Below, piece after piece: positions 2,274-62,265 of a stretch of DNA of 64,000 nt (position 1 is its first letter; every line of letters begins with the position of its first letter). The stretch is from the NCBI RefSeq assembly GCF_000143415.4, contig NW_003314286.1:803460-867459 (forward strand). The letters are read 5' to 3'. The stretch comes from Selaginella moellendorffii (taxonomy: Eukaryota > Plantae > Lycopodiophyta). Under the pieces are notes generated by a model. That model was not told the DNA's origin and did not search any database. It saw only the letters and a list, made by a program, of their open reading frames with translations. The position numbers and the translations under genes are program-made.

Positions 2274-4615
2274 ATGGGGCCGCCCCGACGGACAAGAATG
2301 CCAATGGAGGCAACAGCAGCTCTGAGTTTGGTGGTGATCGCACTTGCGTTCGCTGCACAGGTCGAGGCGTCGCCTTACGAGTACAAGTCTCCACCCCCGC
2401 CTGTTTACGAGACTCCTGCTCCAGTCTACAAGTACAAATCTCCGCCCCCTCCACCACCGGTTTACAAGTACGCTTCTCCTCCCCCACCTGTTTATCACGC
2501 TCCTGCTCCTGTCTACAAATACAAATCCCCACCTCCGCCTGTCTACCACTACAGCTCCCCACCACCACCAGTNNNNNNNNNNNNNNNNNNNNNNNNNNNN
2601 NNNNNNNNNNNNNNNNNNNNNNNNNNNNNNNNNNNNNNNNNNNNNNNNNNNNNNNNNNNNNNNNNNNNNNNNNNNNNNNNNNNNNNNNNNNNNNNNNNNN
2701 NNNNNNNNNNNNNNNNNNNNNNNNNNNNNNNNNNNNNNNNNNNNNNNNNNNNNNNNNNNNNNNNNNNNNNNNNNNNNNNNNNNNNNNNNNNNNNNNNNNN
2801 NNNNNNNNNNNNNNNNNNNNNNNNNNNNNNNNNNNNNNNNNNNNNNNNNNNNNNNNNNNNNNNNNNNNNNNNNNNNNNNNNNNNNNNNNNNNNNNNNNNN
2901 NNNNNNNNNNNNNNNNNNNNNNNNNNNNNNNNNNNNNNNNNNNNNNNNNNNNNNNNNNNNNNNNNNNNNNNNNNNNNNNNNNNNNNNNNNNNNNNNNNNN
3001 NNNNNNNNNNNNNNNNNNNNNNNNNNNNNNNNNNNNNNNNNNNNNNNNNNNNNNNNNNNNNNNNNNNNNNNNNNNNNNNNNNNNNNNNNNNNNNNNNNNN
3101 NNNNNNNNNNNNNNNNNNNNNNNNNNNNNNNNNNNNNNNNNNNNNNNNNNNNNNNNNNNNNNNNNNNNNNNNNNNNNNNNNNNNNNNNNNNNNNNNNNNN
3201 NNNNNNNNNNNNNNNNNNNNNNNNNNNNNNNNNNNNNNNNNNNNNNNNNNNNNNNNNACTCCCCGCCGCCCCCGGTATACAAATATAAGTCACCTCCTCC
3301 CCCCGTCTACCACTACAGCTCGCCACCACCGCCGGTTTACAAGTACAAGTCGCCACCACCACCTGTGTACCATGCCCCGGCTCCTGTTTACAAGTACGAG
3401 TCGCCCCCCCCACCGGTTTACAAGTACAGCTCCCCTCCACCGCCGGTCTACAAATATAAGTCGCCACCACCTCCTGTGTACCACGCCCCGGCTCCTGTTT
3501 ACAAGTACAAGTCACCTCCTCCCCCCGTCTACCACTACAGCTCGCCACCACCGCCGGTTTACAAGTACAAGTCACCACCACCACCTGTGTACCACGCCCC
3601 GGCACCAGTTTACAAGTACAACTCGCCACCACCCCCAGTTTACAAGTACAGCTCGCCACCACCACCTGTTTACAAATACAAGTCGCCACCACCACCTGTG
3701 TACCACACCCCGGCTCCTGTTTACAAGTACGAGTCGCCTCCTCCGCCGGTGTACAAGTACAGCTCCCCGCCGCCACCGGTCTACAAATATAAGTCGCCAC
3801 CACCACCTGTGTACCACGTCCCAGCGCCGGTTTACAAGTACGAATCTCCTCCGCCACCGGTGTACAAGTACAGCTCTCCGCCACCACCAGTCTACAAGTA
3901 TAAGTCGCCACCACCACCTGTGTACCACGCCCCTGCTCCAGTCTACAAGTACAAATCTCCTCCGCCACCGGTGTACAAGTACAGCTCGCCACCACCACCG
4001 GTTTACAAATACAAGTCGCCTCCTCCACCTGTTTACCACGCCCCGGCTCCAGTCTACAAGTACAAATCCCCGCCACCACCGGTGTATCACTACAGCTCCC
4101 CGCCACCACCTGTTTACAAGTATAAGTCTCCACCGCCGCCTGTTTACCACGCTCCCGCCCCAGTCTACAAGTATAAGTCACCGCCGCCACCTGTTTACCA
4201 CTACAGCTCCCCACCACCCCCGGTTTACAAGTACAAATCTCCTCCTCCCCCTGTCTACCACGCTCCAGCACCGGTTTACAAGTATAAGTCTCCGCCGCCA
4301 CCGGTCTATCACTACAGCTCCCCGCCACCACCGGTGTACAAGTACAAGTCGCCACCACCGCCTGTGTACCACGCTCCAGCACCGGTTTACAAGTATAAGT
4401 CGCCTCCTCCACCTGTTTACCACTACAGCTCGCCACCACCGCCGGTCTACAAGTACAAATCCCCGCCACCTCCTGTGTACCACGCCCCGGCTCCAGTTTA
4501 CAAGTATAAGTCACCACCGCCTCCGGTCTACAAGTACCAATCCCCGCCTCCACCGGTGTACCATTCCCCAGCGCCGGTTTACAAGTACCAGTCTCCTCCT
4601 CCTCCTGTTTATTAG
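2274..4615 (+). CDS. Extensin (hydroxyproline-rich cell-wall glycoprotein), interrupted by an assembly gap at 2573-3257
   Basis: Signal peptide (ALSLVVIALAFAAQVEA) then SPPPPVYKYK / SPPPPVYHYS / SPPPPVYHAPAPVYKYK repeats (about 37-aa higher-order unit) with YxY and VYK cross-linking motifs; stop TAG 4613-4615. The frame differs across the N gap, so the gap length is inexact. Confidence 0.95.
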
Positions 4616-23500: not shown

Positions 23501-23911
23501 AAAGGACCGTATCGGGTGTTGCGGCAAGTTAGACCGCAAGTTTATGAGGTTTGGCATGACGTCCAACAGGCCGATCCTCCAGAGATTGTGCATGTGCAGC
23601 GATTGAAATGCTTCATACAAAAGGATCAGGAGCAGTTAATACCATCTACAGATCTGCTGATGCCTCCTCCTGACGTTCCTCCAGATCCCGGCCCGTCTAC
23701 AAGAGAAACCTGACGGCCTTCCATTATTCCGAGAGGAGGGGATGATGTGAGGGCCAAGTGTACGGCTACGATGCTGTATACTAATATTAGCGTAGTGGGA
23801 TTTTAGTAGCCGTCGGATTGGTTTCAATCCGGACCACTCGCTTCTGTATATAAGCTAGGGTTTTTGGGCTAATTGATATACACATTTCTGTATTCCCTTT
23901 CCATATTCACA
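20556..23911 (+). mobile_element. Ty3/gypsy LTR retrotransposon family G, copy I (5'-truncated, least decayed)
   Basis: Gag zinc knuckle CWACDEVGHIYRRC; protease VLVDTGSS; RT ([30 protein letters not shown]); RNase H (VDASDIGLGGVL, YSTTEKECLA); integrase (DLIGPF, ILSDNGPAF, GQVER) and GPY motif, in gypsy order. PPT 23731-23745; 3' LTR 23746-23911. Several stops/frameshifts and an internal deletion near 22575. Confidence 0.95.
20768..20829 (+). promoter_or_regulatory. Predicted -1 ribosomal frameshift signal at the gag/pol junction
   Basis: G GGA AAC in gag phase (20768-20774), 6-nt spacer, 9-bp stem 20781-20789/20802-20810, loop gaaggg pairing with ccctcc at 20824-20829. The -1 frame is open into the protease. 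Confidence 0.8.
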
Positions 23912-24633
23912 ATGGTTGTTATAAAACCAATTAAAGCAATTTGAAATAATGAAAAAAGATAATAAACTTAATAATTAAAAAACCCTAATAATCTAACATG
24001 GAAGGTTGTGAATTTGATCCATATTTTACACTTCCTTTATAAAGTTTTTAATATTAAAGTTTTGAATATGCCCCTAACAGCCCTTGACAATAAATGAGTG
24101 CAATGGAGAATACAATTGATAAGCTTGATACAAATATTCATTGCGTCATCTTGCATCTAGTTTTGAAATAAATCCTCCCCATCTTGAGTAGTCATAGTGC
24201 AAAAGCTAAAACGAAGGATTTCAACCTGTTGACATTATATTAAAACATAACATAATATTTAGTTCATACAGTGATATTAAGCTAAAATAAAGAACATTAA
24301 GTTATATTTTTTGTCAGCCATTTCTACTATACAGAGTCTTTCCAAAATCACCTCTTTCCAATCTAGAAAGAAAAAAGGAAAATAAATAATCTAAATTTTG
24401 AAACCTTTATCTTCTTTACATTGTCAGTATTGGCACTTTGGTCTTGCTTAGTGGAAATATTATTTTCATTCTCACAATTTGATTGTCAAGCTGTAAATAA
24501 AACTTGTTGACAAGAAAAATATTTACAAAGACAACAAACCTACATAAGTAAAAGATCTGGCAAAAAATGCCTCCTTTTACAATGTAACAATTAAGATTTT
24601 TCCATGACACAATCAATCAAGCACAAACTACAC

Positions 24634-28816: not shown

Positions 28817-30887
28817 CTACATAGTTTTATAGTATGATTTTGTACACATTATGTATGATTATATGGAACTCTTCGCGTTCACCACCTTGATGTCATGGAA
28901 CTCAAGGAGGCAAGAAAAATTATTTGAAAGTTATTTTGTGTTTTGATATTTCGCGCACTGCACTTCAGATTGCGCCGTTGGCCAACGCTACATGCCTGCC
29001 GCGAGAAGAATCTCACGAGCAACAGCGTTTCCTCTCAGGTAGAGTGCTGTAAAAACTGTGCTTATGTGCAAAGCCGCCGGCGGCTAGCGGCCTTTTTTTT
29101 GCAGCAAGCCACGGAAGGGGAGGTTCTCTCTGAACATTCCATCGCAAATCTCCTCGGCGCTACCAGCGTTGACGACAGAAGGAAATCACGCTCATGCTCC
29201 TCTGCCGCCTGTGGAAAATTCTCAACCAACACGAAAATCTATAACTTTGAGCTTTTAAAAGTCAGGGAATTTTGATCGTATTAGCACATTTTGAGTTAAG
29301 CCATCGTTTTGGTCGCGTGAGCTCGCCAGGCGAGGCGATCCAAGTCTTTTCAAGAATGATGCATTCTTCATTGCTCTTGATTTGCCTCTGTGTGTTTTTC
29401 ACAGGCTAACATGCTCGACGTTGGCCTGAAGGAGCTGGAAGTGCTGGGCTTTAGATTTGTTGTCCATCTAATCCGCATAAGCAATGTAGGTTTCTCTTTT
29501 CATTGATCACTCACTTGATTCTCTCTAATATTTTCAATGGAAAACATGCTTAATAAAGTTTTTGAGCTTACCAAATCAAGTATAGTTATAGCATGTAGAG
29601 ATTATTTAATATTTTAATTTTGTAAGGACTTTAATATGATACTAAGATTGATGGGAGAACTCTAAAACACTTTCTCTTGAACCCCAACAAGCTTAGAACA
29701 CAATGTTGCTATGACAAACAGCTTGATGTCGTTTTAGCAACTATAGATCGACTATAAATTCAAATTCTAAACTGATAAACTATTTTAAGTGTATGACGAA
29801 TTTTAGAGTAGTTAAATAAAGTCACTTACGTAATAGTTATTTATAATTGACACTTAATATTTAAAGGAATAAAGTTGAGAACACCAAACCTGTCCATGGT
29901 TGTGGGAAACCTGAGCTAAATGGTAGAGCAATTTAACCAACTCAAAGTAAGGGTAAACAAAGTTGCCTTTCATGCAAAAAAAAAAAAACATTTTAAAACA
30001 ACCTTAAATTTGCATAATAGAGCAAAATTACTAACATTTTAAGTAACTTGCACTATAATGCAAAATGTCATCACCCCAAATGCCATCACACTAACCCCTC
30101 TATAGCCATGATATTTCCCTTGGAAAAACTTTTACCATGATATCTTATATATATATATTATGACAAAAGTATAAAGTTGAGAATGAATGAATAAAATTGA
30201 GGGACACATAAAGTTAGGTAAGAGAAATAACCACTGGAAATAAAAATCTTATGCTTCTCAATTGAGCATAACATAACCATAATATTTAGAAGCACGTAAA
30301 TTCAAATGCATCCTTATTATACAACCAATCAGAAATCATTTCAATGAAGAGAAATTATGGTACCATCATCCAGAAAAGCAAACATAATTAATGTCCTATG
30401 TATTGCTCAAGATTATATATAAACAATGATTATTCAAACATAAAAGATAGAGAATAAGATTAATAGAGAAGATCTACATTTGTGATGATATTGTGGAAAC
30501 AAGTGTGAATGAAAAATCTAATATTGTAGGTAAACACAATATTTATAAAATATCAGCACAAATATATTACCATAAAAGTAAAGTTATTATTATAATTTAT
30601 TTTTTATTTTTATATTAGTAGTTTTTGGGGTTTCTTTTTTCTCTATACTACAAGATTTTATTAATTATTTATTTTTGCTAATATATGTGGCTTATTTTCT
30701 GGCATGCATACCTTATTTAATATTTAAAGTTAAAGAAGAAACAAGTTTCTCACAATTTTAATATGTTCCTACTTTATCAAAACCTCTTCTTACATATATA
30801 ACTCTGTCATAGGATTAACTTTAGTATTTTAGATATAATAAAGTATATATAAAGAAAATTAAATAAATATAATTATAAAGTTAGCAA

Positions 30888-33800
30888 TGTGAGTGCCTGG
30901 AATATGGAAAAGGAATATAGAAAATATGTATATCAATTAGCTCAAAAACCCTATCTTATATACAACAGTGAAGGGTCCGGATTAAAACCAATCTGACAGC
31001 TACCAAAATCCTATTATGCTAATATCAATATATGGTATTGTAGCCGTACATTTGGCCCTCACATCATTCCCTCCTTTTGGAATAATGAAAGACCATTAGG
31101 GTTCTCTTGTAGATGGGTTGGGATTTGGAGGAACGTCAGGAGGAGGCATTGGTGGATTTATAAGTGGTATTAACTACTCATGATCCTTTTGTATGAAGCA
31201 TTTCAATCATTGCACATGCACAATCTCTAGAGGATTAGCCTACTGGATGTCATGCCGAACTTTATAAACTTGTGGTCCAACTTGCCGCAACACTCGATAT
31301 GGTTCTTTCCACTGAGCAAGGAACTCCTTAGATAAACTATATACCGTAAGATGGGAAAACGGACTAACACCAAGTCATCCACTTTGTACTCCGTAGGTGA
31401 ACGATGATGGGAGTTGTAGCACCATTGTTGTCCCATTTGTACACAACTTAAGTATTTAGGAAACTCTGCTCAGACAAGTGGAAGAATGCTTGTCAAATAC
31501 TAATCTTACGACCTAGCATCAGCAGCTCATGGCAATCATGAAGGTAAACTTAGCTTCGTTAGTAATATTGGATTATGACCATACAAAAATTTATATGGTG
31601 AAGCACCAATAGAACTCTGGACCCTATGATATATACATATTAAAGAGACGCCAAATAACCATCCCAATCCGAATGTTGAAAGTTCATATACTTCATGATC
31701 GTCCCTTTAAATATCTGAATGAGCTGTTCCACTAGATCATCTGATGTGGATAATAAGCACTCGTAAAAGTGTGGCATATCCCCAATCGAGACGTCAAAAC
31801 ATAAAATGCCTTAGCCATAAATGCGGGACCATTATCCGAAAGAATCCGCTTTGGATAAGAATGCTGGAACACCATTCGATTGAGGAGGAAGTATCCAACA
31901 GCAGTTGCAGAGGCACTAGCAAGAGCACTAACTTCCACCCAACGAGTCAAATAGTCAGAAGCAATAATAACATACTCATTGCCAGCAATCGACTGTGGAA
32001 AAGGTTCCATAATATCAAATGCCACCAACTCAAACATACGGGAAATTGCAATTAATTCCAACCGTCCTTTTGCGGCACAAGAGGGAGTATTACGAGCTTG
32101 GCATTAAATGCAACTACGCACATACCAAATAATATTATGTTGCATCTCCGGCCAATAGAAAGACTTGTGCAGCTTCTTAATTACATGATGATGTTCTATA
32201 TGCCACCTAGAACAGGAGAATTATGGTAGGCATGGAGAAACTGTGAAATAAAGATAGAAGGCACCACCAGTTGTAAATGATTATCAGGATCTGTCCCTAC
32301 AAAATGAAGAAGGCTATATTCAAGGTGATATTGAGAATGTAAATGCCAGAAAAGCAAGTCATCAGTAAATGATGCAAGATTCTCAAACCCATCTCGAAGC
32401 CTTTGAATCCACAGCTTAATATTTTGAGCCTCGCGAACCTCATCAAGAGAAGATAGATCTTGCTCTACGCCTTGTGGACACTGAATGTCAAGTACAACAA
32501 CTATCGACGGCATAAAATCCTCGTTGAGAAAATCCACAGATGCTGAAATAACAAGCTCATTAAAAACATAAAAAGAGAGTAAAGAAGGAAGAGAAGCTCG
32601 ACAAAGGGCATCAACATTAGCCATAGAACTCTCTGAGCGATGAACAACATCAAAATCATATATTTGAAGTTTCAAAGACCACCGAGCAGTATGACCAACC
32701 AGGTTCTTTCACTTTAATAATGAAGGAACGACAGCATGGTCACCTTCAAGTAATGTTTGAGAACCATGTAGATATGCATGAAGTTTCTCGAAACCCCAGA
32801 CTGCTGCTAAACACTCCTTTTTTGTCGTGGAGTAGTTCACCTTTGTTAGTTGTAATGTACGGCTTATATACGTAATAAGATGGCGTTGACCAGGCACACT
32901 TGGGCTCTCTTGCATCAACACATTTCCAAGACTAATATTAGAAGCATTCATGCGCAAAATAAAAGGTGAAGTGTAGTTAGGATATGCCAAAACTAGAGGA
33001 GTCGTCAATAGCTCTTTGAAATCTATGAATGCTTGCTCACAATCCAGAGACCAAATGAAAGATGGCATTGATGACTTCAGCAACACTCGCAATAGTGCAG
33101 TGCGTTAAAAAAAATGATCCACAAAACAACCGAGATACTACACTTTGCCCAAGAAGCGTTGCACATCATTTACACATTTTAGAGTAGGGAACTTTAGAAT
33201 AACCACAAGTTTGTCAAGATTAATTTACAAACCCTCACGAGAAATACAATACCCAAGATAAGTTGAGTCTTTAGACCCAAACATGCACTTTGACCACTTT
33301 AGCTTTAAACCAACATTTTGTAGCTGATCCAACACTTTACAAACATCACAAATGTGCTCTTCTCATATCCCCTCCGAGTGGATCAAGATATTATCAATGA
33401 AGTTAGTAGTCATCTCCAGCATATTGCAAAGAACTTTGTCCATCATTCATTGGAAAGTTGCTGGAGCATTGTTTAAACTAAATGACATCACCAAAAACTC
33501 GTACAAACCAAATGGTGTATGAAAAATAGTTTTAGGAATATCTTCTTCGGCCATCAGTACTTGCTAGTACCCAGAAGCAAGATTTAATTTGGTGAACCAA
33601 TGACTTTGCCTCTGATGATCCAAGAGATCAGCAGTGTAAGGAAAAGGGTACACATTTGGGATTGTCACTTCATTTAACGGAGGATAGTCAATGCAGAAAC
33701 GAATACTCCCATTAGGCTTTATCACAAGATGAAGTTCACATAGCCAAAGACTCCGCGACTTCTGAATAACACCTTTCTCCAACATCTCCTTGACGTTTGC

Positions 33801-35846
33801 ATGTGAAATATTGATTTCTTTGGGTGATTGACAATGAACAAGAACCTTGATTGAACAAGCATCCCTAGTTGGAATCGGATGACATGTGGTAATCTTGGCC
33901 CCAGACTATAGATCAAAGTCAAAGAGATTAGAATACTCTTTCATAAGCCAGTCAACCACTGTAACACAAAAATTGTCAAAGGGATTGGAAAAGGGAAGAG
34001 CAGAATAAAATGGAAATATAAGAGGAAATAGTGGGGGGATAAAAATAATGGAAGCAAAGGTAAAAGTAGGGGGACGAAGGATGAAACATAAGGAAGTATG
34101 AGACAAGGAGGGAGAAACTTTAAAGTCACATTTGGCATGATTGTGCTGCAACCAATTTATACCAAGGATGAGGTAAAAAGTTTGACTCAGCACCACCCGC
34201 AATAATTACAACTCAAGCTCAAAATCACCCATACGCACCACCAGATTTGCCTTATCCCATGCACATGCATGTGTATGGCCGTTGCCATAAAAAATGAAAA
34301 TTGCTCCCATTGCACGATGCAAGTGTAAACGGCAATGTGTGGTAACAGGTTGAGCAATAGAAGATAAACTCAAACTTGTATTAACCAACAAGGAGAGAAT
34401 AATATGAGATTTTTTGTTATAAAAACGAACTTAGAAAGTAAACATTGGATGAACTGGTGCCGAGTGAACCCCTTAATGATACTCCCGAAAGAAAGATGGA
34501 GGGGTCATTGACTTATTCGTGTAAGATCCCTTTGTTACTCGTGTGACTCCTCGTTTCTCGAATGCATCTCGGTGTCCAGAACTTCCACTGCAACAGCACT
34601 AATAGGATGTTGTTGACGCCAAGGTCTCCATCCAGGAAATGGAAGTCACCAATTTGGAAAACATCGACAACACTGATAAGTGTGACCAACTTCATCACAT
34701 GCCCAATAGCGAACGTCACGGCCACGACCACATCCTTGCCCTTGTCCTTGGACTCGAGCAGCAACAACATCAACCTCCATTAAAACAGAACCATCGCCCA
34801 TAGGAAGTGGAGTGGAAGGATGGGCAGTGAGAAGTGGAAGAGGCAATATCTCATAATGTTGTGCCAAGTGAAGAGCATTATCAAGGGTGGCTGGAGCAAG
34901 TGCATGCACAAGTCTGACAAGATCTTGATGAAGTGTTGGGTACAACATTCTTAACTTGATCCGCTCTGATATATTTGGTTCTGCACAAAACAAGAGGCTT
35001 AAAAAATGAATGCCAAATTGCATCACCGGTTTAGATGGCCCTTGACAAAGACAATGCAATTGCTGGAAGGCATCATCACAATTGTCAACATGTTTGAAAA
35101 CGTCAAGTTTGAAAACGTTTAGGAGAACACTCCAATCCCCATGAGTGGCTGCACTAAAACCATTATGCCACTGCAGTGCCGTCCCTTGGAGACACGTGGG
35201 AAATTCATGCAAACATCGAGTATCATCCCAAGAATGATATGTGGTAATCATTGTAAAGTGATTGAACCAATAGTACACATCATCCTTAGGATTCCCACGA
35301 AAGAACTCCAGCCGAACGCAAGGATTGGCACCAAGAGCAGGAGGAGCTATACCACGTGCCGTGAGTGCCACCATCAATTGAGTTTAATTGTTCAATTGCA
35401 ATCACATGGCATCAAGCAATTGCACCAACTGCTGCTCCAGAGTTAAAGGACAAGATTGCTTCTCTGCCATGAAGATGAATGAAGAGGAAAGAGCAAAAGA
35501 AGAGCAATGAGAAGAAAATTAAAAGGAAAGGAATGGAAAAGCTAGATTTAAACCAAAATCTTGAAAGGAAAGAATAAAAAAAAAGAAATGGAAAAAACTA
35601 AATCTAAATGATGTAAAAGCTAAATCTAAACCAAAATCCAAAATCCAACCACTCCTCAGGAATAATAAAAAGTGCCCTTTACCTTCACCAATTTGAGTGT
35701 TTGGAATATGGAAAAAGAATACAAAAAATGTACATATCAATTAGCCCAAAAACCCTAGTTTATATATAGGAGTGAGTGGTCTAGATTGAAATCAATCTGA
35801 CAACTACTAAAATCCCACTACACTGCACGTACACTTGTCCCTCACA
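30888..35846 (-). mobile_element. Ty3/gypsy family G, copy II, full-length but decayed
   Basis: LTRs 35692-35846 (5') and 30888-31063 (3'); PBS 35674-35690; gag ORF 34646-35377; broken PR-RT-RH-IN; 4-bp TSD GCAA (30884-30887, 35847-35850). Confidence 0.95.
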
Positions 35847-36266
35847 GCAAGAATTTATAATTCTTGAGAATATAACAAATGTGTAAATTAGAAGTTAATA
35901 GCATCTTTACTCTTTCTTAAATTAGTCATCAAATAAAACTTGGCTACAAAAAGATTAAATTAGTTTTGAAAAATGTAAATTATGATGATGCTATCTCACC
36001 TAATAATTTTTAATAGTAAAACTATATACATTAATGATTTTAGTAGTCACCTCATATTTCTTTAACAAATCTTGAAATAGAAAAAAGTAAATCCTTGCTA
36101 GTATAAAGTGTTTTAGTACTTAAAATAATGAGTGAAAATTTTCTATTCAAATATATAGAGCCTTCAATTGCCACCTAATATTTAAAATAATAGAATTGAT
36201 TAAAAAAATTCATTTTAACACCTTACTACAAAATTAATTATCATGAAAAATTGGGTACAAATATCA

Positions 36267-50164: not shown

Positions 50165-52711
50165 AAACCCTAAATCTGGAAAGATTAAGCTAACCGGTTA
50201 TATTTAATTAGGAACGAAATTTTAATGTCATCACTAATTCAAAAGAAGAAATAAACTTTAATTAAAATTTAATATTTCTAAGTTAAAGGTTTGTTATAAT
50301 TCATCTATTTAAAAAAATTATAGAATTTATTAAATATTACTAAACTAACATAGTTATATATCATTTATACATGCTTCAAAAAATAAAACTTATAATAATG
50401 TTTTGTATTCATCAAAAAGTTATTCTCATAATCAGAATTAACCTTTCTATTGTATTTTGCAAAAATGAACACTTCAAAAGAAAACTAAAAATAATGACAT
50501 TACATCATTCGACTATAATCAATCATATAAAATAAATGATTAATGATACGATTTCATAATTAATTTTGAGAACTAAAAAATATATTTTTAGAAAAATTTC
50601 TTAAGAATCAAACTCAATCTCTCTATAATGAAAATATAAAAAACAATTTAATATTAATTTAAATACCACTTATTTATAACATATTTATATAAAACAATTG
50701 TGAGGTTTATGATGCCATATATTAATATTAGCGTAATGGGATTTTGGTAGCTATCAGATTGGTTTCAATTTAGACCACTCACTCATGTATATAAACTAGA
50801 GTTTTAGGGCTAATTGATATGCACATTTTCTATATTTCCTTTTCATATTCCAAGCACTCACATTGGTGGAGGTGAGGGGCATTTTCCATTGTCCTTAAGA
50901 GTGTTTGGATTTAGGATTTTGGTTTAAATTTAACTTTTGAATTGTTTAGATTTAACATTTTCTATTTCCTTTCTTTTATTCTTTCTTTTCAGGATTTTGG
51001 TTTAAATTTAACTTTTCCATTGTCTAGATCTTCCTTTCTTTCTAGTTTTTTTATGATTTCTCTTCTTTTACTCTTTCCTTTTTATTCATCTTCATGGCAG
51101 AGTAGTAGTCTCTTCCTCTGACTCTAGAGTAGTAGTTGGTGTAATTGTTTGATGCTATGCAATTATAATTGAACAACCAAACTAAGTTGATAGCAACATT
51201 CATAGCACATAGTACAACTCCTCTTTTTTTTGGTGCCAATTTTTGCATTTAACCGGAGTTCTTTCGTAGGAATCCTGGGGATGATATGTACTATTGATTC
51301 AATCACTTCACAATAATTGCCACATATCATTTTTGGAATGATACTCGACATTTACATGAGTTTCCCATGTGTCTCCAAGGGATAGTGTTGTAGTGATACA
51401 ATGGTTTGAGTGCAACCACTCGTGGGGATTGGAGTGTTTTCCATAATGTCTTCAAACGCACATTTGGACATGCTGATGATTATGATAATGATTTCCAGCA
51501 ATTGCATCGTCTTTGTCAAGGGCCATCTGAGGTGGTGATCCAATTTAGCGTTCATTTCCAAAGCCTCTTGCTTCATGTGGAGCTAAATATGTCAGAGAGG
51601 ATCAAACTAGGAATGTTGTGGCTAGCACTTCGTCAAGATCTTGTCGGATTTATACATACACTTGCTCCAGCCACCCTTGACAATACTCTTCGCTTGGCAC
51701 AATATTATAAGATGTCGTCTCTTCCACTTCTCCCTATACATCCTTCCACTCCACTTCTTGTGAGGGATGGTCCTGTTCCAATGGAGGTTGATGCTACTAT
51801 TGCTCGAATTCAAAGACAAGGGCAAAGATGTGGTTGTGGTTGTGACATTTGCTATTAGGCATGTGATGAAGTTGATTACACTTATCGGTGTTGTCAGTGT
51901 TTTCCAGATTGGTGACCTCCATTTCTTGGGTGGACACCTTGGCGTCAACAACATCTTATTGGTGCTGCTGTAGTGGAAGGTCTAAATACTGAGATGCATC
52001 CGGGAAACAAGGAGTCATGCGAGTAACAGAGGGACCTTGCGCGAATAAGTCAGTGACACCTTCATCTTTTTTTTGGGAGTATCATCAAAGGGTCCACTTA
52101 GTACTGATTCATCTAGTGTTTACTTTCCAAGCTCGTTTTTATAACAAAATGTCTCATATTATTCTCTCCGTGTTGGTTGATATAAGTTCGAGTTTATCTT
52201 CTATTGCTCAACCTGTTGCCACATGTTGCCGTCTACACTTGCATCATATGGTAGAACCAATTTTCATTCATTATAGCAACGGCCGTACACATGCATGTGC
52301 ATGAGATGAGGTAAACCTGATTGTGCATGTGGGTGATCTTGAGCTTGAATTACAGTCATTGTAGGTGGTGCCAAGTCAAGCTTTTGACCTCATCATTGGT
52401 ATGGGTTGTAGCGCAATCATGCTAAATATGACTTTGAGGCTTTTCCCCTTTATCTCATACTTCCTTGTATTTCATTTATTCCTCTCACTTTCATACCACT
52501 TCATCCTTCTACTTCTACCTCTACTTCTATTACTTTTGTCTTCCCACTACTTCCTTGTACATTTCTATTTTGTTCTACTCTTCCCTTTTTTATTCTTCCA
52601 ACAATCTTTGTATTATAGTGGTTGACCAGCTTATGAAGGAGTATGCTAATTTCTTTGAATTTGACCTATCATCTGGGGCCAAGATTGCCACATGTCATTT
52701 GATTCCAATTA

Positions 52712-54385
52712 GGTCCAACCCCTACACTCTCCCTACTATACTTTTGGAGTCTCACTCACAACCTTTATAAGTTTTATTCTGGACTTAGGGACTTGTTAGC
52801 CCCAAAAATGGCATCTATGCCACTCAACCTTTGCACTTGGTCTAAATGTTGCATGTGTTTAATCTCATGACCACCCAAAGGTACCACTGACATACCAGCC
52901 TATTACTCTAAAGCTATACCCATTCACCTTTGTCACACTGATGATCCAACACCACCCATATCATAGTCTTGTCTCTCAAAGACTGGGCCATCCGTCCATG
53001 AGTGATCATCCCATATCCACTCGTTACCATCCTTAGGATGCCCATAGATATGGGGAATAACCTTCTCTAATATCCCTTTTTAAGTCCCCACTAAGTCCCT
53101 TTCCGTCCATGATTGTGTTCACCAACATTGCCACTGGATCAAAGCCCATAGTCCTGACCACCAAGTCCCATTGTCCTCTGGGACTTCCTCACCATGTGAC
53201 TGTATCTTTAGTCGCCATACCAAAAGACTACTCCTCTTCCTTTCCACAATCTAGCACTTTGGGACAACATTTTGGAACACTGTGGCCCTATGCGAGCCTT
53301 ATGGGTATTCTCCCCGCCTTCTGTCTTTGGGTGCTCTAGCCATGGACTTAGAGTGAGGTTCCATTAAGCCATGCCAGGTATCCAAGTAGATAATGCCACC
53401 CACGCTTGGACTGGGAGTATCAACCATTCAATTTCCCGGGGGAATTAGAGCCAACTCTTGAACACTTCATCAAGTTACCCCATTTGTCAGTCTGTATTCA
53501 CTTTAGTCTTGGACTTCCCAATGGTTATCTCATCACCCAACATCAGGTATAACTTTCTTGGGCCAAATTGACTCCACTGGGGTCCAACCCCCACACTCTC
53601 CCTACTATAATTTTGGAACCCTTCTATAGCCCTCCGCCCCCCTGGGGGACGATCGCTTTAGACTTTCACCCAATAACTTATATTAGTATTCGGACTCAGA
53701 CTCGGACTCAGATTTGGACTCGGACTTGGTCTTAGTCTTGGACTCGAACTCAATCTTGGTCTCGGACTCAGTCTCGGTCTCGGTCTCGGTCTCTCAGTTT
53801 CAATCTTGATTCCATCTTGGAGTCCATCTTGGGTCTATCTCGAGTCTATCTCAAACTCCATTTTGGACTCCATTTCGGATTGCATCTCAGGTCTATCTTG
53901 GACTCCATCTTGGGTCCATCTCGAACTCCATCTCAGACTTGATCTCGGACTCCATCTCAGGTTCATTTTGGGTCCATCTCGGACTCCATCTCGGGTCCAT
54001 CTTAGGTCCATCTCGGATCCATCTCAGGTTGATCTTAGACTCCATCTTGGGTCCATCTTGGGTCCATCTCAGACTCCATCTCAGGTCCATCTCAGGTCCA
54101 TCTCAGGTCCATCTCAAACTCCATCTCAGGTCCATCTCAGGTCCATTTCAAATCCATTTCGGACTCCATGTGTTAGTCATCTTGTATCCTTTTTCTATAG
54201 ACTCACTTACTGTTTGCTTCATACTTGTTCTCGAGCACTTTGTTGAGAGTTGCACTCCCACTCTCAACTGTCTAAGTCGGAGCTTTTAGTCCAAATGTGT
54301 TATTCCTATTTGGCTTTCATTTCGGCCACTACCATGTGGCACCCTTTTGACTCCACTTTTAGGGTTTTGGGATTTGTGTCTTATA
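52712..54385 (-). mobile_element. Family-A LTR inserted in the PR/RT region of copy III, left end rearranged
   Basis: Aligns to the 16819/17838 LTRs including the GGACTC tracts and ends gatttgtgtcttata at 54385. The left terminus is replaced by an internal LTR piece and about 15 bp of host are missing, so no TSD is visible. Confidence 0.85.
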
Positions 54386-56457
54386 AGTTCCTGTTCCTTG
54401 TCAATCCCCCAAAAAGATCAAGATTTTACGTGCAAATGTCAAAGAAATATTAGAAAAAGGTGTTATTCAAAAGTTGCAAATGGGTATATGAACCTCATCT
54501 TGTGACGAAGCCTGATGGGAGTATTTATTTTTGCATTGACTATCGTCCATTAAACAAAGTGATGATCCCAAATGTGTACCTTTTTCCTCACACTACTAGT
54601 CTCTTGAATCATCTGGGGAGAAGTTGTTTATTCACCAAGCTAAATTTTGTTTTTGGGTACCAACAAGTAGCAATAACTGAAAAAAATATTCCTAAGACTG
54701 CTTTTTGTACACCATTTGGTTTATACAAATTATTAGTGATGCCATTTGGTTTCAACAATGCTTTAACGACTTTTTAGCGGATGATGGATGAGGTTCTTTG
54801 CAATATGCCAAAGGTGACTACTAACTTCATTGATGATGTCTTGATTCACTTGGAGGGACATGGGAGGAACACGTCTATGATGTTTGTAAAGTGTTAGATT
54901 GGCTACGAAACGTTGGTTTAAAGTTAAAACAGTTAAAGTGCATGTTTGGGTCCAAGGATACAACTTATCTTGGGTACCATATTTTTCGTGAGGGTTTGCA
55001 AGTTGATTCTGACAAACTTATGATTATTCTAAAGTTTCCTACTCCGAAGTGTGTGAATAATGATATGTAAAGCTTCTTGGGCAAGGTCTAGTATCTTGGT
55101 TGTTTTGTGGATCATCTTTCTGATCGCACTGCACTATTGCAAGCATTGTTGAGGTCATTAACATTGTTTTTCATTTGGTATGCAGATTGTGAACGGGCAT
55201 TTGTGGATCTTAAAGAGTTATTGACAATTCCTTTGATTTTGGCATATCCTAAATACACTCAATCTTTCATTTTGCACGTGGATGATTTTGATATTAGTCT
55301 TGAAGGTGTGTTAATGCAAAAGAGCCCGAGTGTGCATAGTCAACACTATCCCATTATATATATCAACCGTACATTACAACCGGCGAAGATGAACCACTTT
55401 ATGATAGAGAATGAGTGTTTAGCAGTAGTCTGGGGTTTTGAGAAAATTCATGCATATCTACATAATTCTCGGACCTTACTAAAAGGAAATTATATTGCTG
55501 TTACTTCATTATTGAAGAACTTAGTTAGTCGTATTGCTCAGTGCACTTTAAAGCTTTAGATGATGTTGTTCATCACTTGGGGAGTTCTATGGTTAATGTT
55601 AATGCCCTTTTTTAAGTTTTTCTTCCTCCTTCACTCTCTTTTTATGTTTCTGACAAGCCTATTGTTTTAGCACCTATGAATTTTATAGACGAGGATTTTG
55701 TGCCATTAGCAATTGTTATACTTGACGCTCAATGTCCACAAGGTACAGAGCAAAATCTATTTTCTTTTGATGAGGTTCATGAGGCTCAAAAAATTAAGCC
55801 ATGGATTCAAAACCTTCGAAAAAGGTTTGAAAATCCTATATCACTTGTTGATGACTTGCCATTCTTGCATTTACATTCTTAATATCACCTTAAAGACATT
55901 TTCAATATCAAAAGAAATATTTTAAATCAGAATAAGGTTTTTAAAGCTCACATGAAAAACATAATTATGTTTTTAATCTTTAAACAAGTATTTGTATACT
56001 AGTTAGAAAAACATTATCCACATTAACTCGGTTATTTTCATTGACTTAGATTTTAAATCAATGTTGTGGAGCATAAAAAAAATCTAAATCACCATTGCTT
56101 GGAGTGAATATTGCTAGAAGAAAAATCCACTATAAAAGCATCTCCCAAAGAAGTACACAAAGTTGACTAAGGTAAATAAACTTAAATTACATGTTTTCAG
56201 GGTTTATTAGCATACAACTATTATCTACCTATACTCACTGGGTAACATTATAAAATGACATAAAACCACATAATACGCTAATAACTGCTAAATATTGATA
56301 GATAAATAAAAGTGAAGAATATTTGACATATGAGTTCTTGTAGTACTTAGGATAAACCATTACAGAAATATTGACAAAACTTGGTGTATAATTATAAATA
56401 ATTATGCTTTAATTTGTCAATCAACAGAAATTATTGTCTATTTTATAATTTATTTTC

Positions 56458-57306
56458 TTAACATAAAGAATGAGAACTTAATTCCCACCATATTTTATTT
56501 GGAAATTGTACAGTAGAAATTACCAAATTACAATCATTCTGAACAGTAAAGTAATAAAGATTTAAGGAACTTATATCTTGAGGATAAACTGAATTAGTTC
56601 TCCAAATTATTTGGTAATTATTATATAAAAAGCAAATACCATTAGTTTGAAATTCTAATACACAAGATACATTAACATTTTGTGATGTATGTGACTCCCA
56701 AATTTGAGTCTTCTGGAAATAAAGAACAAGATTACAATCTTTTTTTAACAATAAAATATCTTTTTCATTAGGAGAGACTAAAAAGTTACCACTATAAAGA
56801 ATCATAGGACTAATAAGTGTATTAGATTCAAGAATGCATAAATATAAACCACCAAACAGTTTACTTTTTTGAAGAAGTTCTTCCCGGTTTTCTAGCTCAT
56901 ATTGTATGAAATAACCACTATTTTCATTTAGAAAAAAATCATAAAGATGTAGATTAAGAATACTTATATATGGATATAAAAGTCTTTCAAAACCAGATTT
57001 TAAATTTATTCCCTTTGTTTTTACCACTGTCTCACTTATAGAGCATTGGTATTTTGATTTAATTTCTATATTTACAATTCCACATGAAACACTAACAGAT
57101 CCTCCATCTCCATAAGTACGAGAATAATCTTCTTTGTGGTTAATTTTATTTATTAAATCTGTAATTAAGCCAATAACTTTTACCATATCTTGTGCATTTA
57201 ATATTCTGGCCCTTCCAAATTTCAAATTTAGTGGAGCAATAGTTTCTTTAAAATAGAAAAATACAAGTACTAGTAAAACTATAAATATTTTAACTATGAT
57301 AGCCAT
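56458..57306 (-). CDS. Putative secreted protein: signal peptide + unknown ~130-aa domain + bulb-type (GNA/B-) lectin domain; intronless, 282 aa
   Basis: Hydrophobic N-terminus IVKIFIVLLVLVFFYF; C-terminal LYSGNFLVSPN..ILLLKKDCNLVLY....IWESHT...CVLEFQTNG..LY....IIWRTNS...YYFTVQNDCNLVI matches the three-subdomain B-lectin pattern; TATAAAT about 40 bp upstream (57346-57352, minus). Confidence 0.8.
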   Translation of the reverse strand: MAIIVKIFIVLLVLVFFYFKETIAPLNLKFGRARILNAQDMVKVIGLITDLINKINHKEDYSRTYGDGGSVSVSCGIVNIEIKSKYQCSISETVVKTKGINLKSGFERLLYPYISILNLHLYDFFLNENSGYFIQYELENREELLQKSKLFGGLYLCILESNTLISPMILYSGNFLVSPNEKDILLLKKDCNLVLYFQKTQIWESHTSQNVNVSCVLEFQTNGICFLYNNYQIIWRTNSVYPQDISSLNLYYFTVQNDCNLVISTVQFPNKIWWELSSHSLC

Positions 57307-60300
57307 TATATCTTAGTACCTTTTGTGTTAAAACCTATATATTACATTTATAAGCTTTTGCTGTTTGGAAGTTTCTAAAAATAGAATAATACTATTGTTA
57401 ACATATATATTAATATTTCTAATTCGTGATATGACCTAGGATCCTAATTATAATTTTATATTCTTGAAATGAAGAAGCCTATGTTTATTATTAATAAACC
57501 TTTCGAATGAAGAAAACTTGAATTTACAAGTGAAATATTACCTCACTATATTGAATTTTATATTCTTGTAAACAACAGTTAACACTTAATACAATCCCTT
57601 GAAATTGAATAGAAATGCATATACTTTGCACCATATGATAGCTTTATAATAATATTAGTATTGCCCAATAAATGCACAGTGAATATAAAAACAAAAACGT
57701 TTATACAGCTTTTTGAATATATTAGAACATCCAGGCATAAGTAATAATAAATATTTTTAATAAAGTATGCAAATATAATCTTAAATATGAATATTAGATG
57801 TAAATTATTATTTGGAAAGTCACGCAAGTAATGGAGGGACCTTGCATGAATAAATTAGTGACCCTATCTTTCTTTATCAAAGGGTTTACCTTCTCTTGAT
57901 GACGTTCGTGAGACTTAAAAGCTTGAGGCATGCATTCGAAAGCTTTGAAATGGGTTTAAGAATCTTGCATCATTTGCTTATAATTTGTTATTCCGACATT
58001 CACATTCTCAATATCATCTTAAATACTGCTTTTTTTATTTTGTGGGGATGGATCATGATGATCCTTTATAGCTGGTAATGCCTTTTGTCTTTATTCCATG
58101 GTTTTTTTATGCCTACCATGATTTTCCTATTTTAGGCGGGTATATAGGACATCGTTGTATGACCAAGAAGCGACACAAATCTTTCTATCAGTTAGAAATG
58201 CGACATAATGTTATCCAATATGTGCGTAACTGCGTTTGGTGCCAAATTCGTAATACTCCCCCTAATGCTGCAGAAGGATGGTTAGAATCAATTGCAATTT
58301 CCCATTTGTTTGAGTTGGTGGAGTTAACATTATGGGACTTTTTCCATGATCGATTATTAGCAATGAATATGTTATTATTGCTTTTGATTATTTGACTCAT
58401 TGGGTGGAAGTTGGTACTTTTGCTAGTGCCTCTGCGACTGCTGTTGGATACTTTTTCCTTAATCAAGTGGTATTCTAGCATTTTTGTTTAGAGCAGATTC
58501 TTTAGGATAATGGTCCCGCATTTATGGCTGAGGCATTTCATGTTTTGACATCTCAATTGGATATACACCACACTTTCATGAGTGCTTATCATCCATAGTC
58601 AGATGGTTTGGTGAAATGACTCGTTCGGACATTCAAAAGAATGATCACAAAGTATGTCAACTTTCAACATTCAGATTGGGATGGTTATTTACTGTTTCTT
58701 CAGTATACATATGTCACAAGGGTGTAGAGTTCTATTAGTGCTTCACCATATAAATTCCTGTATGGTCATGATCCAATATTACCAACGGAGCTGGGTTTAC
58801 CTTCGTGATTGCCACAAGCTGCTGATGCTAGGCCATGGGATTAATATTTGACAAACATTCTTCCACTTATCCAAGCAGAGTCTGCTGAATAGTTAGGCCA
58901 TATATAAGTAAGACAACAATGGTGTCACAACTCTTATCATCGTTCACATGTGGAGTACAAAGTGGATAGTCCATTTTCCTCATCTTCTGGTATATGGTTT
59001 ATCTAAAGGGCTTCTTGCTCAGTGAAAAGGACTGTATCGAGTGTTGTGGCAAGTTAGACTACAAGTTTATAAGGTTTGGCATGACGTTTAATAGGCCGAT
59101 CCTCTAGAAATTGTATATGTGTAGTGGTTGAAACACTTCATACAAAGGGATCATGAACAATTGATACCACTTACAAATCCACTAATGCCTCCTTTTGACA
59201 TTCCTCTAAATCCCAACCCATCTATAAGAGAATCCTGATAGTTTTCTATTATTCCGAAAAGAGGGGATGATGTGAGGTTTAAGTGTATGGCTACAATACT
59301 ATATATTAATATTAGTATAGTGGGACTTTAATAATTGTCATATTGGTTTCAATCCAGACCACTAGCTCCTGTATATAAACTAAGGTGTTTAGCCTAATTG
59401 ATATGCACATTTTTCATATTCCCTTTCCATATTCTAGGCATTTACACAATTAAAATTTCTTCCTTATTTCTCTAGATTATTTTAATTTAATTAACTCAAT
59501 ATTTTAATTATGTTATGTTCAGAACTTTTTAAACAAAACCTACCTTATACATAAATTTGAGATATATATATATATGAAAAATATATTTGTTTATCAATAT
59601 AATTGAAATATATTACATGCTATTAAACAATTATTATATTTTTAATTTATTACTTTATTCGAAATTTTAATTCAAAAATAAAGACCAAGATATCTATAAC
59701 AAGTAAATATATAAATTTGGTGACTAACAACTAATTACAAGGTAAAACCATATTTATATAGTAATAGAAAATCCACATTTAAAATGATTATAGTTTATAA
59801 ATTATTTTATAAATCTAAAAAACACATTTTAAACATTTTAAAATAGTTTTGTGATCACTATTTCTAATTTTAAAGTAAAAATAGTTTTAAAGTTTAGTTT
59901 TTACAAACAAGTTATTAACTTTAATGATAAAGTTTAACCGCTATTTTTATACCACAAAAACATATTTTTCAATGATAATTGATAAATAATGAGAGTGTTC
60001 TCAGTAAAAAAGTATAATTTATTATATGTATGTATTATATTTTTTTTATAAATCTAAATTAAACAGCCACTATCATGTAACTTAATTAATATCTAAATTC
60101 TAAAATACTTCGAAATCATAAGTTTTAAAACTTTATTTGTATGCTTTTATAATGAATAATTTTCAGAATTGCCATGCTTATGTATATGAAATAAAATTCT
60201 ATATTAAATAAATATTTATTTGTTATTTGTATCTTCCATGATTTTTTAATCTTTCTATGATAAATTTAATTGATCCAAAAGAAGGACAATCTAAAAACAT

Positions 60301-61309: not shown

Positions 61310-61409
61310 NNNNNNNNNNNNNNNNNNNNNNNNNNNNNNNNNNNNNNNNNNNNNNNNNNNNNNNNNNNNNNNNNNNNNNNNNNNNNNNNNNNNNNNNNNN
61401 NNNNNNNNN

Positions 61410-62265
61410 TTTTTGTGGAGCTGTCGGCGCAGCAGCTGCTGGATTGCTCCCGGAGCTACGGCACCGATGGCTGCCACAGCGGCTTTCCCCAGAACGCATT
61501 TGAATACCTCGTCGACACAGGCAATGGCCTCTCGATCGCATCGGATTACCACTTCACAGGTTTCAATGCCACCTGCCGAAAACATGTAAGTACGTGCACC
61601 ATTGTTTTTTACTAAAGTGCTGCTCTCCAGAACCGCTACTCCGTCGGCATTGACGACTACGACAATCTCTATGGCTCCAGCGACGACACGGACATGGTCG
61701 CGCAGGTTGCCAAGCAGCCCGTGACAGCTCTAATCGATGGCAATGCGCCAGAGTTCCTTCGCTACAAAGGGGTCAGTGAAAAATCTTTTTTTTTTTTTTT
61801 TTCTTTTGTGAAGGACAAGTCGCTGAAGCCTTCGAACTAAAAATGCAGGGGATTTACAAGGGCCCATGCAAAGATGACCAGGCAACTCCGTATCTAGCGG
61901 TGCTCATCGTCGGCTATGGATCCGAAAACGGCCAGGACTACTGGATCATCAAAAACTCGGCGGGGACAAGCTGGGGAGAGCAAGGCTACATGAGGCTGCA
62001 GCGTGGAAACCATGGCCTTCCACTGGGTCGATGTGGAGTGAATGGCTTCGTCTACTTTCCCGTCAAACAGAAGCCACCGCCATCTCCACCACCGCCATCT
62101 CCGCCGCCACCCTCTCCTCGACCGCCACCGTCGCCCCCGGTTCCGTGCAGTAAAAGGATTAGCTGCAGGTCGCTGATTCCAACCTTTGCGTGCTGCCCTC
62201 CCAGGGCCAGACCCTGCTGCTGCCCCTGGTGGAAAAGATGTGGTGAGTATGGATGCTCTCTTTAA
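61410..62265 (+). CDS. Papain-family (C1A) cysteine-protease homologue with Pro-rich linker and Cys-rich tail, 3' part; catalytic His absent
   Basis: [65 protein letters not shown]; introns 61586-61630 and about 61772-61848; 5' end in gap. Confidence 0.9.

What the first reader, a model, noticed from the sequence alone, without database searches (positions are those of the whole stretch)
55760..58023. Intact secreted lectin-fusion gene apparently captured inside a dead gypsy element
Seen: an 849-bp intronless ORF (56458-57306, antisense to the element) sits in a ~1.9-kb foreign insert (about 55895-57814). The insert lies between the two LTRs of copy III, which share a TSD (CAAT) and a private start (TGTGAGGTTT). 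On the right, the insert is followed by ~75 bp of the element's gag/pol junction (57815-57889), then a second copy (57890-58023) of the ~135 bp found to its left (55760-55894). The surrounding pol is broken by stops every few hundred bp and the LTRs are roughly 20% diverged by eye. The very AT-rich ORF is nevertheless open and keeps four TGG codons and an upstream TATA. Known: duplicated or out-of-order element sequence around cargo is what RT template switching produces, and B-type lectins are plant defence proteins. Inference: a retro-captured defence gene kept by selection after its vector died. A later insertion into the old element is the alternative.
Basis: partly seen in the sequence, partly recalled or inferred. 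Interest (0 to 1): 0.88.

Follow-up and report, generated by a model that had tools for sequence, protein, structure and literature searches.

The report
Lectin gene inside a dead retrotransposon
An intact, unannotated spikemoss gene for a secreted protein with two sugar-binding-type domains sits inside one old, broken jumping gene; it was pasted there by a multi-step copy-and-paste event, which makes it a tidy but not exceptional case of gene movement.

Summary
ORF 56458-57306(-) is intact (282 aa). It lies in a 25% GC block inside one Ty3/gypsy copy (50699-59446). That copy has a 4-bp TSD (CAAT) and an LTR start shared only by its own two LTRs. The block sits between RNase H and integrase and is flanked by a 137-bp duplication of pol plus a roughly 100-bp gag/pol filler.

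New details:
- Two extra 15-16-nt copies of the breakpoint motif bracket the cargo proper (55911-57771). The junction therefore records four to five template switches.
- There are no TIRs, Helitron ends or poly(A).
- The gene carries its own TATA box, so its own mRNA was not the template.

The protein belongs to a native Selaginella moellendorffii family that this scan has already met on other DNA. I recovered six full-length intronless paralogues (24-29% GC), each in a 1.2-1.5-kb AT-rich island between ordinary genes. None lies inside a gypsy element. The N-domain, previously called orphan, models as a DUF26/Gnk2-like fold (Z about 9, low-confidence model).

Which polymerase did the pasting is unresolved: DNA break repair about 0.5, reverse-transcriptase capture about 0.3. 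Selection on the ORF is likely (it stays open in 0.1% of neutral simulations if it is as old as the element) but unproven, and expression could not be tested.

The parts
50699..50862 (+). 5' LTR of gypsy copy III, preceded by the TSD CAAT (50695-50698) and followed by a PBS-like TTGGTGG
52714..54386 (.). Separate nested insertion of another repeat family; not part of the cargo event
   Evidence: matches 17899-19443, 16880-17706, 8026-8798 and others; also matches L004 and L005
55107..55559 (+). Surviving RNase H open stretch of pol, just left of the breakpoint
   Evidence: PF17919, E 1.6e-21
55758..55896 (+). Left copy of the 137-bp pol duplication (RNase H-integrase linker); ends in the breakpoint motif at 55873-55896
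55896..55910 (+). Extra partial copy (positions 1-15) of the 24-nt breakpoint motif, directly abutting the left copy
   Evidence: 4 hits in the window against 0.24 expected by chance; the others are the homologous sites
55911..57771 (-). Cargo proper: a 25% GC block with no detectable donor in the window or the fetched loci
56458..57306 (-). Intact intronless ORF of 282 aa: signal peptide (about residues 1-24), DUF26/Gnk2-like N-domain (about 25-150), GNA-type lectin domain (about 160-278)
57347..57352 (-). TATA box 41-46 bp upstream of the ATG, at the position typical of the family
57772..57787 (+). Extra partial copy (positions 9-24) of the breakpoint motif at the right end of the cargo
   Evidence: 4 hits in the window against 0.19 expected
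57790..57889 (+). Filler copied from the element's gag/pol junction, in sense orientation (core 57818-57875), with an 8-bp internal deletion
57890..58025 (+). Right copy of the 137-bp pol duplication; pol continues collinearly from here
58078..58395 (+). Integrase zinc-binding (H2C2) open stretch, right of the breakpoint
59271..59446 (+). 3' LTR of copy III, preceded by a purine tract and followed by the TSD CAAT (59447-59450)

Best explanation
The ORF is a member of a native, unannotated Selaginella moellendorffii gene family. The genes are compact and intronless, use a TATA promoter, and have extreme AT bias. Each encodes a secreted protein with a DUF26/Gnk2-like N-domain joined to a GNA-type lectin domain. 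The family lives in AT-rich islands, the same compartment that gypsy family G inserts into.

This copy, promoter included, was pasted as a 1.86-kb genomic segment into the RNase H-integrase linker of one family-G element. The pasting took four to five template switches. These left a 137-bp target duplication, two 15-16-nt stutter copies of the breakpoint motif bracketing the cargo, and a roughly 100-nt filler from the element's own gag/pol junction.

I judge the likeliest enzyme to be a DNA repair polymerase patching a staggered double-strand break: synthesis-dependent strand annealing or polymerase-theta-type end joining with templated filler. The event happened early in the element's residence, or it used another family-G copy as template.

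Shown: the anatomy, the family, and the age of the duplication. Inferred: which polymerase acted, selection on the ORF since the event, and a sugar-binding, possibly antifungal, role.
For: Single element: TSD CAAT, an LTR start private to this copy, and collinearity with copy II across the site.

Mosaic junction: the 137-bp duplication; the breakpoint motif found only at homologous sites plus the two cargo ends (chance 0.2); the gag/pol filler. Short stutter copies of the sequence next to a break, and patchwork filler from nearby cis sequence, are what plant break repair and T-DNA junctions show (my own knowledge). Gene-carrying fragments flanked by duplicated or tandem target sequence are the described signature of DSB-repair gene movement (PMC3503983, describing Wicker et al. 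2010).

Promoter carried along: TATA about 45 bp upstream of the ATG in this copy and in all six paralogues.

Family: six full-length single-exon paralogues, 23-36% identical over both domains, at 24-29% GC between genes of 50-57% GC. Homology between paralogous loci stops at the ORF ends.

Shared compartment: all eight visible family-G insertion flanks have 17-33% GC against 43% overall.

Protein: lectin domain; N-domain fold matches to PDLP5, PDLP8 and Gnk2 at Z 9.3, 9.3 and 8.9, then Y3, LDL and KP4, with unrelated rows at 4.4 or below.

ORF maintenance: 4.5e-12 by composition; 0.1% of neutral simulations at copy III's own measured rates.
Against: All four element-derived pieces are in sense orientation, and two of them start exactly at the same position. 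Reverse transcriptase jumping between sense RNAs would guarantee this; ectopic DNA templates would not.

The duplication is not younger than the LTR pair (26% against 20% divergence). An event in cis must therefore fall in about the first quarter of the element's life.

No donor locus was found, so the filler model lacks its template.

The selection inference assumes that TE-like C-to-T decay applies to the cargo. At a quarter of the age or rate, 15% of simulations stay open.

The window protein has no fully canonical QxDxNxVxY site, and it has lost 4 of 27 residues that are invariant in the other six paralogues. That is about what neutral drift would give.

The structure model is low confidence (mean pLDDT 58), and there is no sequence-level link to DUF26.
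Confidence: 0.5

Rival explanations
1. Reverse-transcriptase capture. During reverse transcription of a family-G RNA, the enzyme jumped from pol to gag/pol, back to pol, onto a co-packaged read-through or antisense transcript covering the lectin island, and back to pol. The chimeric cDNA then integrated as copy III. A variant is target-primed reverse transcription at staggered nicks 137 bp apart.
For: The duplication is as old as the LTR pair and as copy III's own lineage divergence. The filler lacks two of copy III's private substitutions. All element pieces are in sense orientation. Two acceptor pieces begin at the same nucleotide (about pol 3505), as end-to-end template jumping onto a broken template would give (the enzymology is my own knowledge). 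Antisense orientation lets a cassette with its own poly(A) signal survive an RNA stage (inference). Gene capture by plant LTR elements is documented, for example Bs1 and rice and sorghum surveys (PMC13317346).
Against: Four to five non-homologous switches in one replication cycle is a lot. Neither cargo end abuts an LTR, as read-through transduction predicts. The cargo holds the promoter, so the gene's own mRNA is excluded. Copy II has no cargo at the site, and no second cargo-bearing copy was seen. Six paralogues are not in gypsy elements. The age argument is void if the duplicated piece came from another G copy.
Confidence: 0.3
2. The AT-rich lectin block is itself a mobile cassette, or a LINE-mediated retrocopy, that inserted into the old element with its own target duplication.
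For: The family is dispersed in sharply bounded 1.2-1.9-kb AT-rich blocks and is intronless. The cargo is bracketed by overlapping copies of the target motif sharing AATATCA / AATATAA, which resembles a 7-bp TSD.
Against: There are no TIRs, Helitron ends or hairpin, no poly(A) at either end, and no conserved termini. Homology between paralogous loci ends within tens of bp of the ORF. The promoter is included, which an mRNA retrocopy would lack. No flanking direct repeats were found at the six other loci.
Confidence: 0.07
3. Two independent truncated family-G insertions happen to flank an ordinary resident gene.
For: Family G favours AT-rich islands, where these genes live. L003 has a G solo LTR 260 bp upstream of a paralogue.
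Against: The outer LTRs share the 4-bp TSD and a private start variant. The two halves are in the same orientation and complementary to within 137 bp of a 4.9-kb element. The joint chance is roughly 3e-4.
Confidence: 0.01
4. The ORF is no longer under selection. It is a silent copy that has not yet been hit by a stop, either because it arrived late or because the cargo decays more slowly than the element.
For: An earlier scan report on another family member saw no RNA (s1-341470; not tested here). The window protein has the most degenerate sugar-binding motifs of the seven and has lost both cysteines of a loop that the paralogues keep. Its loss of residues invariant in the other six (4 of 27) equals the neutral expectation. 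At a quarter of the rate or age, 15% of simulations stay open.
Against: At copy III's measured decay the ORF stays open in only 0.1% of runs (0.04% with indels). It holds 16 codons that are one C-to-T or G-to-A step from a stop, and all are intact. The duplication that came with the cargo is as old as the element. Both cysteines of the loop were lost together, which suits a working protein.
Confidence: 0.3

Closest known systems
DSB-repair 'patch' gene movement in plants (Wicker, Buchmann and Keller 2010, as described in PMC3503983) and templated filler DNA at plant break and T-DNA junctions
   Same: A gene-carrying genomic fragment is copied into a non-collinear site. The site is flanked by duplicated or tandem target sequence, shows microhomology, and holds patchwork filler taken from nearby sequence.
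   Different: The donor locus is not identified here. The target is the interior of an LTR retrotransposon. The 137-bp duplication is long. All filler pieces keep the element's orientation.
Gene capture (transduction) by plant LTR retrotransposons, such as maize Bs1 and the rice and sorghum surveys (PMC13317346)
   Same: Host sequence lies between the two LTRs of a single element with a TSD, and the junctions suggest template switching.
   Different: Known cases are mostly gene fragments, often spliced, present in several element copies and often in sense orientation. Here the cargo is a whole gene with its promoter, antisense, seen in one copy only, with no LTR-adjacent junction.
GNA-related (bulb-type, B-type) lectins, such as gastrodianin GAFP-1 (1xd5) and snowdrop agglutinin (1msa)
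   Same: Same beta-prism II fold (Z 10-11), sequence similarity (E 9e-9), and the conserved cysteine pair.
   Different: The domain is fused to an N-terminal domain. None of the three QxDxNxVxY sites is fully canonical in the window copy. Codon bias is extreme (GC3 14%).
DUF26 / Gnk2 domain (ginkbilobin-2, PDLP5/8 ectodomains) and the related fungal lectins Y3 and LDL (PMC6368629)
   Same: The predicted alpha+beta fold of residues 22-147 matches all of these (Z 9.3 down to 5.3). The protein is secreted and comes from a land plant, and the domain type is carbohydrate-binding and antifungal.
   Different: No sequence similarity, no C-X8-C-X2-C motif, and only two conserved cysteines. The model is low confidence. 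A DUF26-like domain joined to a GNA domain is not an architecture I found described.

Membership tests
GNA-related / B-type lectin domain (PF01453) | Sequence match to the family | tested here: met
   PDB phmmer E 9e-9. 635 hits at E<=1e-3 among 1.84e9 representatives, all to residues about 160-275. The single sequence is below Pfam's gathering score (18.9 against 32.4 bits).
GNA-related / B-type lectin domain (PF01453) | Beta-prism II fold | tested here: met
   Foldseek E 6.5e-7 and TM-score 0.63-0.71 normalised to the target. VIA Z 10-11 over residues 158-282. pLDDT in this domain is about 70-75.
GNA-related / B-type lectin domain (PF01453) | At least one canonical QxDxNxVxY mannose-binding site | tested here: not met
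   The window copy has KxDxNxVxY, QxNxIxFxY and QxDxNxVxS. Paralogues L001, L002, L004 and L005 keep one or two intact sites.
DUF26 / Gnk2 (PF01657) | Alpha+beta fold of Gnk2 and PDLP ectodomains | tested here: met
   6gre_B Z 9.3 (rmsd 2.8, 100 aa); 6grf_A Z 9.3; 4xre_A Z 8.9 (102 of 108 aa); then Y3, LDL and KP4. Unrelated rows are at 4.4 or below. Foldseek 3a2e_A E 3.4e-4. Caveats: model pLDDT is 55-75 here, and the N-domain folded alone failed (pLDDT 45).
DUF26 / Gnk2 (PF01657) | Sequence match and the C-X8-C-X2-C cysteine motif | tested here: not met
   No Pfam hit for any of the seven N-domains. No PDB profile hit at E<=10. Only two cysteines are conserved (C88 and C157).
LTR-retrotransposon gene capture (Bs1-like transduction) | Cargo lies between the LTRs of one element that has a TSD | tested here: met
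LTR-retrotransposon gene capture (Bs1-like transduction) | The same cargo in further copies of the element, showing passage through retrotransposition | tested here: inconclusive
   Copy II lacks it. Copy I is deleted at the site. The L006 copy is cut off 100 bp before the site. The whole genome could not be searched.
LTR-retrotransposon gene capture (Bs1-like transduction) | RNA origin of the cargo: spliced, or a read-through junction at an LTR | tested here: not met
   The family is intronless, so splicing says nothing. The promoter TATA is included. Neither cargo end abuts LTR sequence.
DSB-repair patch / filler-DNA gene movement | Foreign gene-bearing fragment flanked by duplicated target, microhomology and patchwork filler | tested here: met
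DSB-repair patch / filler-DNA gene movement | A donor locus with homology to the whole fragment | not testable with these tools
   No donor in the window or in seven fetched loci. A paralogue reported 13 kb beyond the window end (s1-433299) could not be fetched.
DNA transposon, Helitron or LINE retrocopy | TIRs, or 5'-TC...CTRR-3' with a hairpin, or a poly(A) tail | tested here: not met

The most novel reading that the evidence does not exclude
A complete, promoter-bearing gene for a secreted two-lectin-domain protein was carried in antisense inside a Ty3/gypsy element through reverse transcription, and was then kept by selection after its vector died. LTR retrotransposons that target AT-rich islands would then be a route by which this compositionally extreme gene family spreads through the spikemoss genome.
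Probability: 0.25. Interest if true: 0.55.

Novelty: new member of a known kind. Interest (0 to 1): 0.35.

Why it matters
The locus is a well-preserved junction that records a gene being pasted, promoter and all, into a retrotransposon. It keeps enough internal markers (a 137-bp duplication, stutter copies, filler) to decide between reverse-transcriptase capture and break-repair patching once the whole genome and a donor locus can be searched.

The gene also belongs to a family that public annotation reduces to lectin-only fragments (EFJ38584.1, EFJ36847.1). The fold result suggests the family joins two domain types known from antifungal plant proteins. Its extreme AT bias, set among GC-rich neighbouring genes, remains unexplained.

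Tried and rejected
Expression and presence/absence polymorphism remain untested.
- The search for homologous proteins with the whole protein and with the lectin part alone found nothing. Only a three-sequence profile found the partial S. moellendorffii models.
- No gene with exactly this product is on record.
- ESM Atlas feature searches gave only sub-threshold leads: aerolysin/ETX 0.82 and DUF6414 0.78. I discarded both.
- The Atlas shape search returned only bacterial B-lectin fusions with TM-score below 0.5.
- The N-domain folded alone was unusable (pLDDT 45).
- Transition-tolerant alignment of the cargo's 3' flank and of the ORF to the element found nothing. The 5' flank gave a weak signal to antisense pol with no protein-level support. 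I leave that open.
- Pairwise dN/dS of the window copy against the paralogues is saturated and uninformative (0.66-0.95).
- Giant-virus origin: Maumus et al. 2014 report only an exoribonuclease family of clear NCLDV (giant-virus) origin in S. moellendorffii and no lectin. Nothing here supports a viral origin.
- No fetched locus overlaps the window or its other haplotype.

Full report
**1. What is there**

ORF 56458-57306 on the minus strand is open for 282 codons at 26% GC. With its own base composition, the chance of 282 stop-free codons is about 4.5e-12. The other five frames over the same span carry 18-30 stops. GC falls from 36% to 28% to 14% across codon positions 1 to 3, as expected for a real coding sequence under AT pressure.

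The region sits in a 25% GC block, while the element on either side has 36-38% GC.

**2. The element**

Self-comparison of the window shows three copies of one Ty3/gypsy family:
- copy I, about 20569-23908;
- copy II, 35824-30885 on the minus strand;
- copy III, 50699-59446.

Copy III has these features:
- LTRs at 50699-50862 and 59271-59446, 80.1% identical.
- Both LTRs start TGTGAGGTTT, where copies I and II have TGTGAGGGCC or TGTGAGGGAC.
- CAAT on both outer sides. Copy II also has a 4-bp TSD, so 4 bp is the family's habit.
- An RNase H open stretch (55107-55556, E 1.6e-21) to the left of the block and an integrase zinc-binding stretch (58078-58392, E 1.7e-7) to the right. The block therefore interrupts the RNase H-integrase linker.
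- An unrelated second nested insertion at 52714-54386.

The idea of two independent truncated insertions is effectively excluded.

**3. The junction**

Both flanks of the block map to the same 137 bp of copy II (32319-32455), so the duplication is real. The gag/pol piece is real too and probably spans 57790-57889 with an 8-bp internal deletion.

One feature is new. The 24-nt motif at which the left copy ends (55873-55896) recurs twice more. Its first 15 nt lie at 55896-55910, directly after the left copy. Its last 16 nt lie at 57772-57787, just before the filler. In the whole 64-kb window these patterns otherwise occur only at the homologous sites of copy II and of the right copy, against about 0.2 chance hits expected.

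From left to right the order is:
1. pol up to about element position 3505;
2. pol 3482-3496;
3. cargo 55911-57771;
4. pol 3490-3505;
5. the dinucleotide TG;
6. gag/pol, about 1270-1370;
7. pol from 3369 onward.

That makes four to five template switches, and every element-derived piece is in sense orientation. The block has no TIRs, no Helitron ends and no poly(A) at either end.

**4. Age**

- The two 137-bp copies are 73.7% identical to each other. They are 81.8% and 79.6% identical to copy II.
- Sites shared by the two copies against copy II (8) are no more numerous than sites private to each (16 and 19). This fits a star-like history.
- Copy III's own lineage has diverged 12.3% from the state shared by copies I and II.
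- The filler lacks two substitutions private to copy III.

So the rearrangement dates from about the time the element arrived, or its templates were other family-G copies. These data cannot separate the two possibilities.

**5. The gene family**

An exhaustive HMMER search found relatives only for residues about 160-275. Two short hits are S. moellendorffii partial models, EFJ38584.1 and EFJ36847.1.

I fetched these and five further annotated lectin fragments from GCA_000143415.2. The fetched loci contain six full-length single-exon paralogues of 280-300 aa (a seventh locus, L007, has only a lectin-domain fragment):
- They are 23-36% identical to the window protein over both domains.
- They have 24-29% GC overall and 10-15% at third codon positions.
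- Each lies in a sharply bounded AT-rich island of 1.2-1.5 kb between ordinary genes of 50-57% GC, such as PPR/rhodanese and SET/SET.
- Homology between paralogous loci stops within tens of bp of the ORF.
- All have a TATA box about 45 bp upstream of the ATG, as does the window copy.
- None lies inside a family-G element. L003 has a G solo LTR 260 bp upstream, and L006 has a G copy 6 kb downstream.
- All eight visible family-G insertion flanks have 17-33% GC, so element and gene family share a compartment.
- dN/dS for the two closest pairs is 0.53 and 0.65 by NG86. This method overestimates the ratio at such codon bias.

Earlier reports of this scan describe the same family on other DNA.

**6. 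The protein**

The N-terminus is a hydrophobic signal peptide.

The C-domain is a GNA-type lectin. In the window copy its three sugar-site motifs are each one or more residues off the canonical QxDxNxVxY.

An AlphaFold model from the seven-sequence alignment is weak (mean pLDDT 58). Even so, residues 22-147 match the following:
- PDLP5 at Z 9.3, PDLP8 at Z 9.3 and Gnk2 at Z 8.9;
- then the fungal lectins Y3 (Z 6.2) and LDL (Z 5.3), and KP4 toxins (Z about 4.3);
- unrelated rows at Z 4.4 or below.

This is the same set of structures that Vaattovaara et al. 2019 link together (PMC6368629). There is no sequence-level support and no C-X8-C-X2-C motif. I therefore call the N-domain DUF26-like in fold, not a member of the DUF26 family.

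**7. Selection**

I measured copy III's lineage-specific rates: C to T 0.23, G to A 0.22, A to G 0.035, T to C 0.026 and indels 0.003 per site. I then decayed the present ORF in silico at those rates. It stays open in:
- 0.1% of runs at full age (0.04% with indels);
- 2.5% at half the age;
- 15% at a quarter of the age.

Sixteen codons (4 TGG, 10 CAA, 2 CAG) are one such step from a stop, and all are intact.

Against this, the window protein has lost 4 of the 27 residues that are invariant in the other six paralogues, about the neutral expectation. Selection is likely but not shown.

**8. Mechanism**

The cargo carries its promoter and is antisense, so the gene's own mRNA was not the template. 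Two models fit the anatomy.

(a) DNA-level repair of a staggered break, with templated filler. Stutter copies of the break flank and patchwork filler are typical of this route (my own knowledge). Gene movement by such patches is described for grasses (PMC3503983).

(b) Reverse-transcriptase jumping, either in the virus-like particle or at a nicked target. This explains the uniform sense orientation and the two pieces that start at the same nucleotide. Capture by LTR elements is documented (PMC13317346).

Neither model is excluded. I weight them about 0.5 and 0.3.

**9. Limits**

- The rest of the genome could not be searched, so I could not look for the donor or for further cargo-bearing copies.

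Noticed in passing
window 57346-57773: The ORF's 5' flank aligns weakly to the antisense strand of family-G pol (about 54795-55172 in copy III, with homologous sites in copies I and II) when transitions are tolerated. The score is 109 against a dinucleotide-shuffle mean of 68 (sd 10; 1 of 200 shuffles reach it). The alignment has 45% identity plus 30% transitions, biased from C to T and G to A. There is no protein-level support. It may be a much older, deaminated relative of the element that came with the cargo.
   Followed up: partly
window 30585-30884, 35825-36124, 50408-50707, 59447-59746, 23909-24208; L006 15926-16225; L003 8730-9507: Every visible insertion flank of gypsy family G has 17-33% GC (window mean 43%), and the family makes 4-bp TSDs. 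The family appears to target, or survive only in, AT-rich islands.
   Followed up: partly
window 50699-59446 compared with copies I and II: Decay of copy III is overwhelmingly C to T and G to A (about 0.23 per C or G, against 0.03 for A to G and T to C, with few transversions). This is the signature of deamination of methylated cytosine, and it may underlie the AT-rich islands.
   Followed up: partly
L001 9491-10354; L002 9446-10312 (GCA_000143415.2, GL377565.1 and GL377566.1): Public models EFJ38584.1 (117 aa) and EFJ36847.1 (103 aa) cover only the lectin half of 287- and 288-aa single-exon ORFs. The family is systematically under-annotated.
   Followed up: yes
L004 9270-9506 and 9461-10303: This paralogue has its signal-peptide-like start in a different frame from the rest of the ORF. 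That indicates a frameshift, a sequencing error or a young pseudogene.
   Followed up: no
L002 6503-8119 and 12396-10770: The lectin island lies exactly between two inverted, 82% identical copies of a SET-domain gene.
   Followed up: no
window 22571-22589: Copy I lacks the pol segment that corresponds to 55470-58108 of copy III. This internal deletion removes the breakpoint region.
   Followed up: no
window about 61400-61520: There is a run of N (assembly gap) inside the gene-rich right end of the window. That end holds fragments of a cis-prenyltransferase-like, a papain-type protease and a pfkB-kinase gene.
   Followed up: no
window 57818-57875, 52013-52073, 20779-20839: The filler fragment is a copy of the stretch that another note (s1-405419) reads as the family's gag/pol frameshift cassette.
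   Followed up: partly
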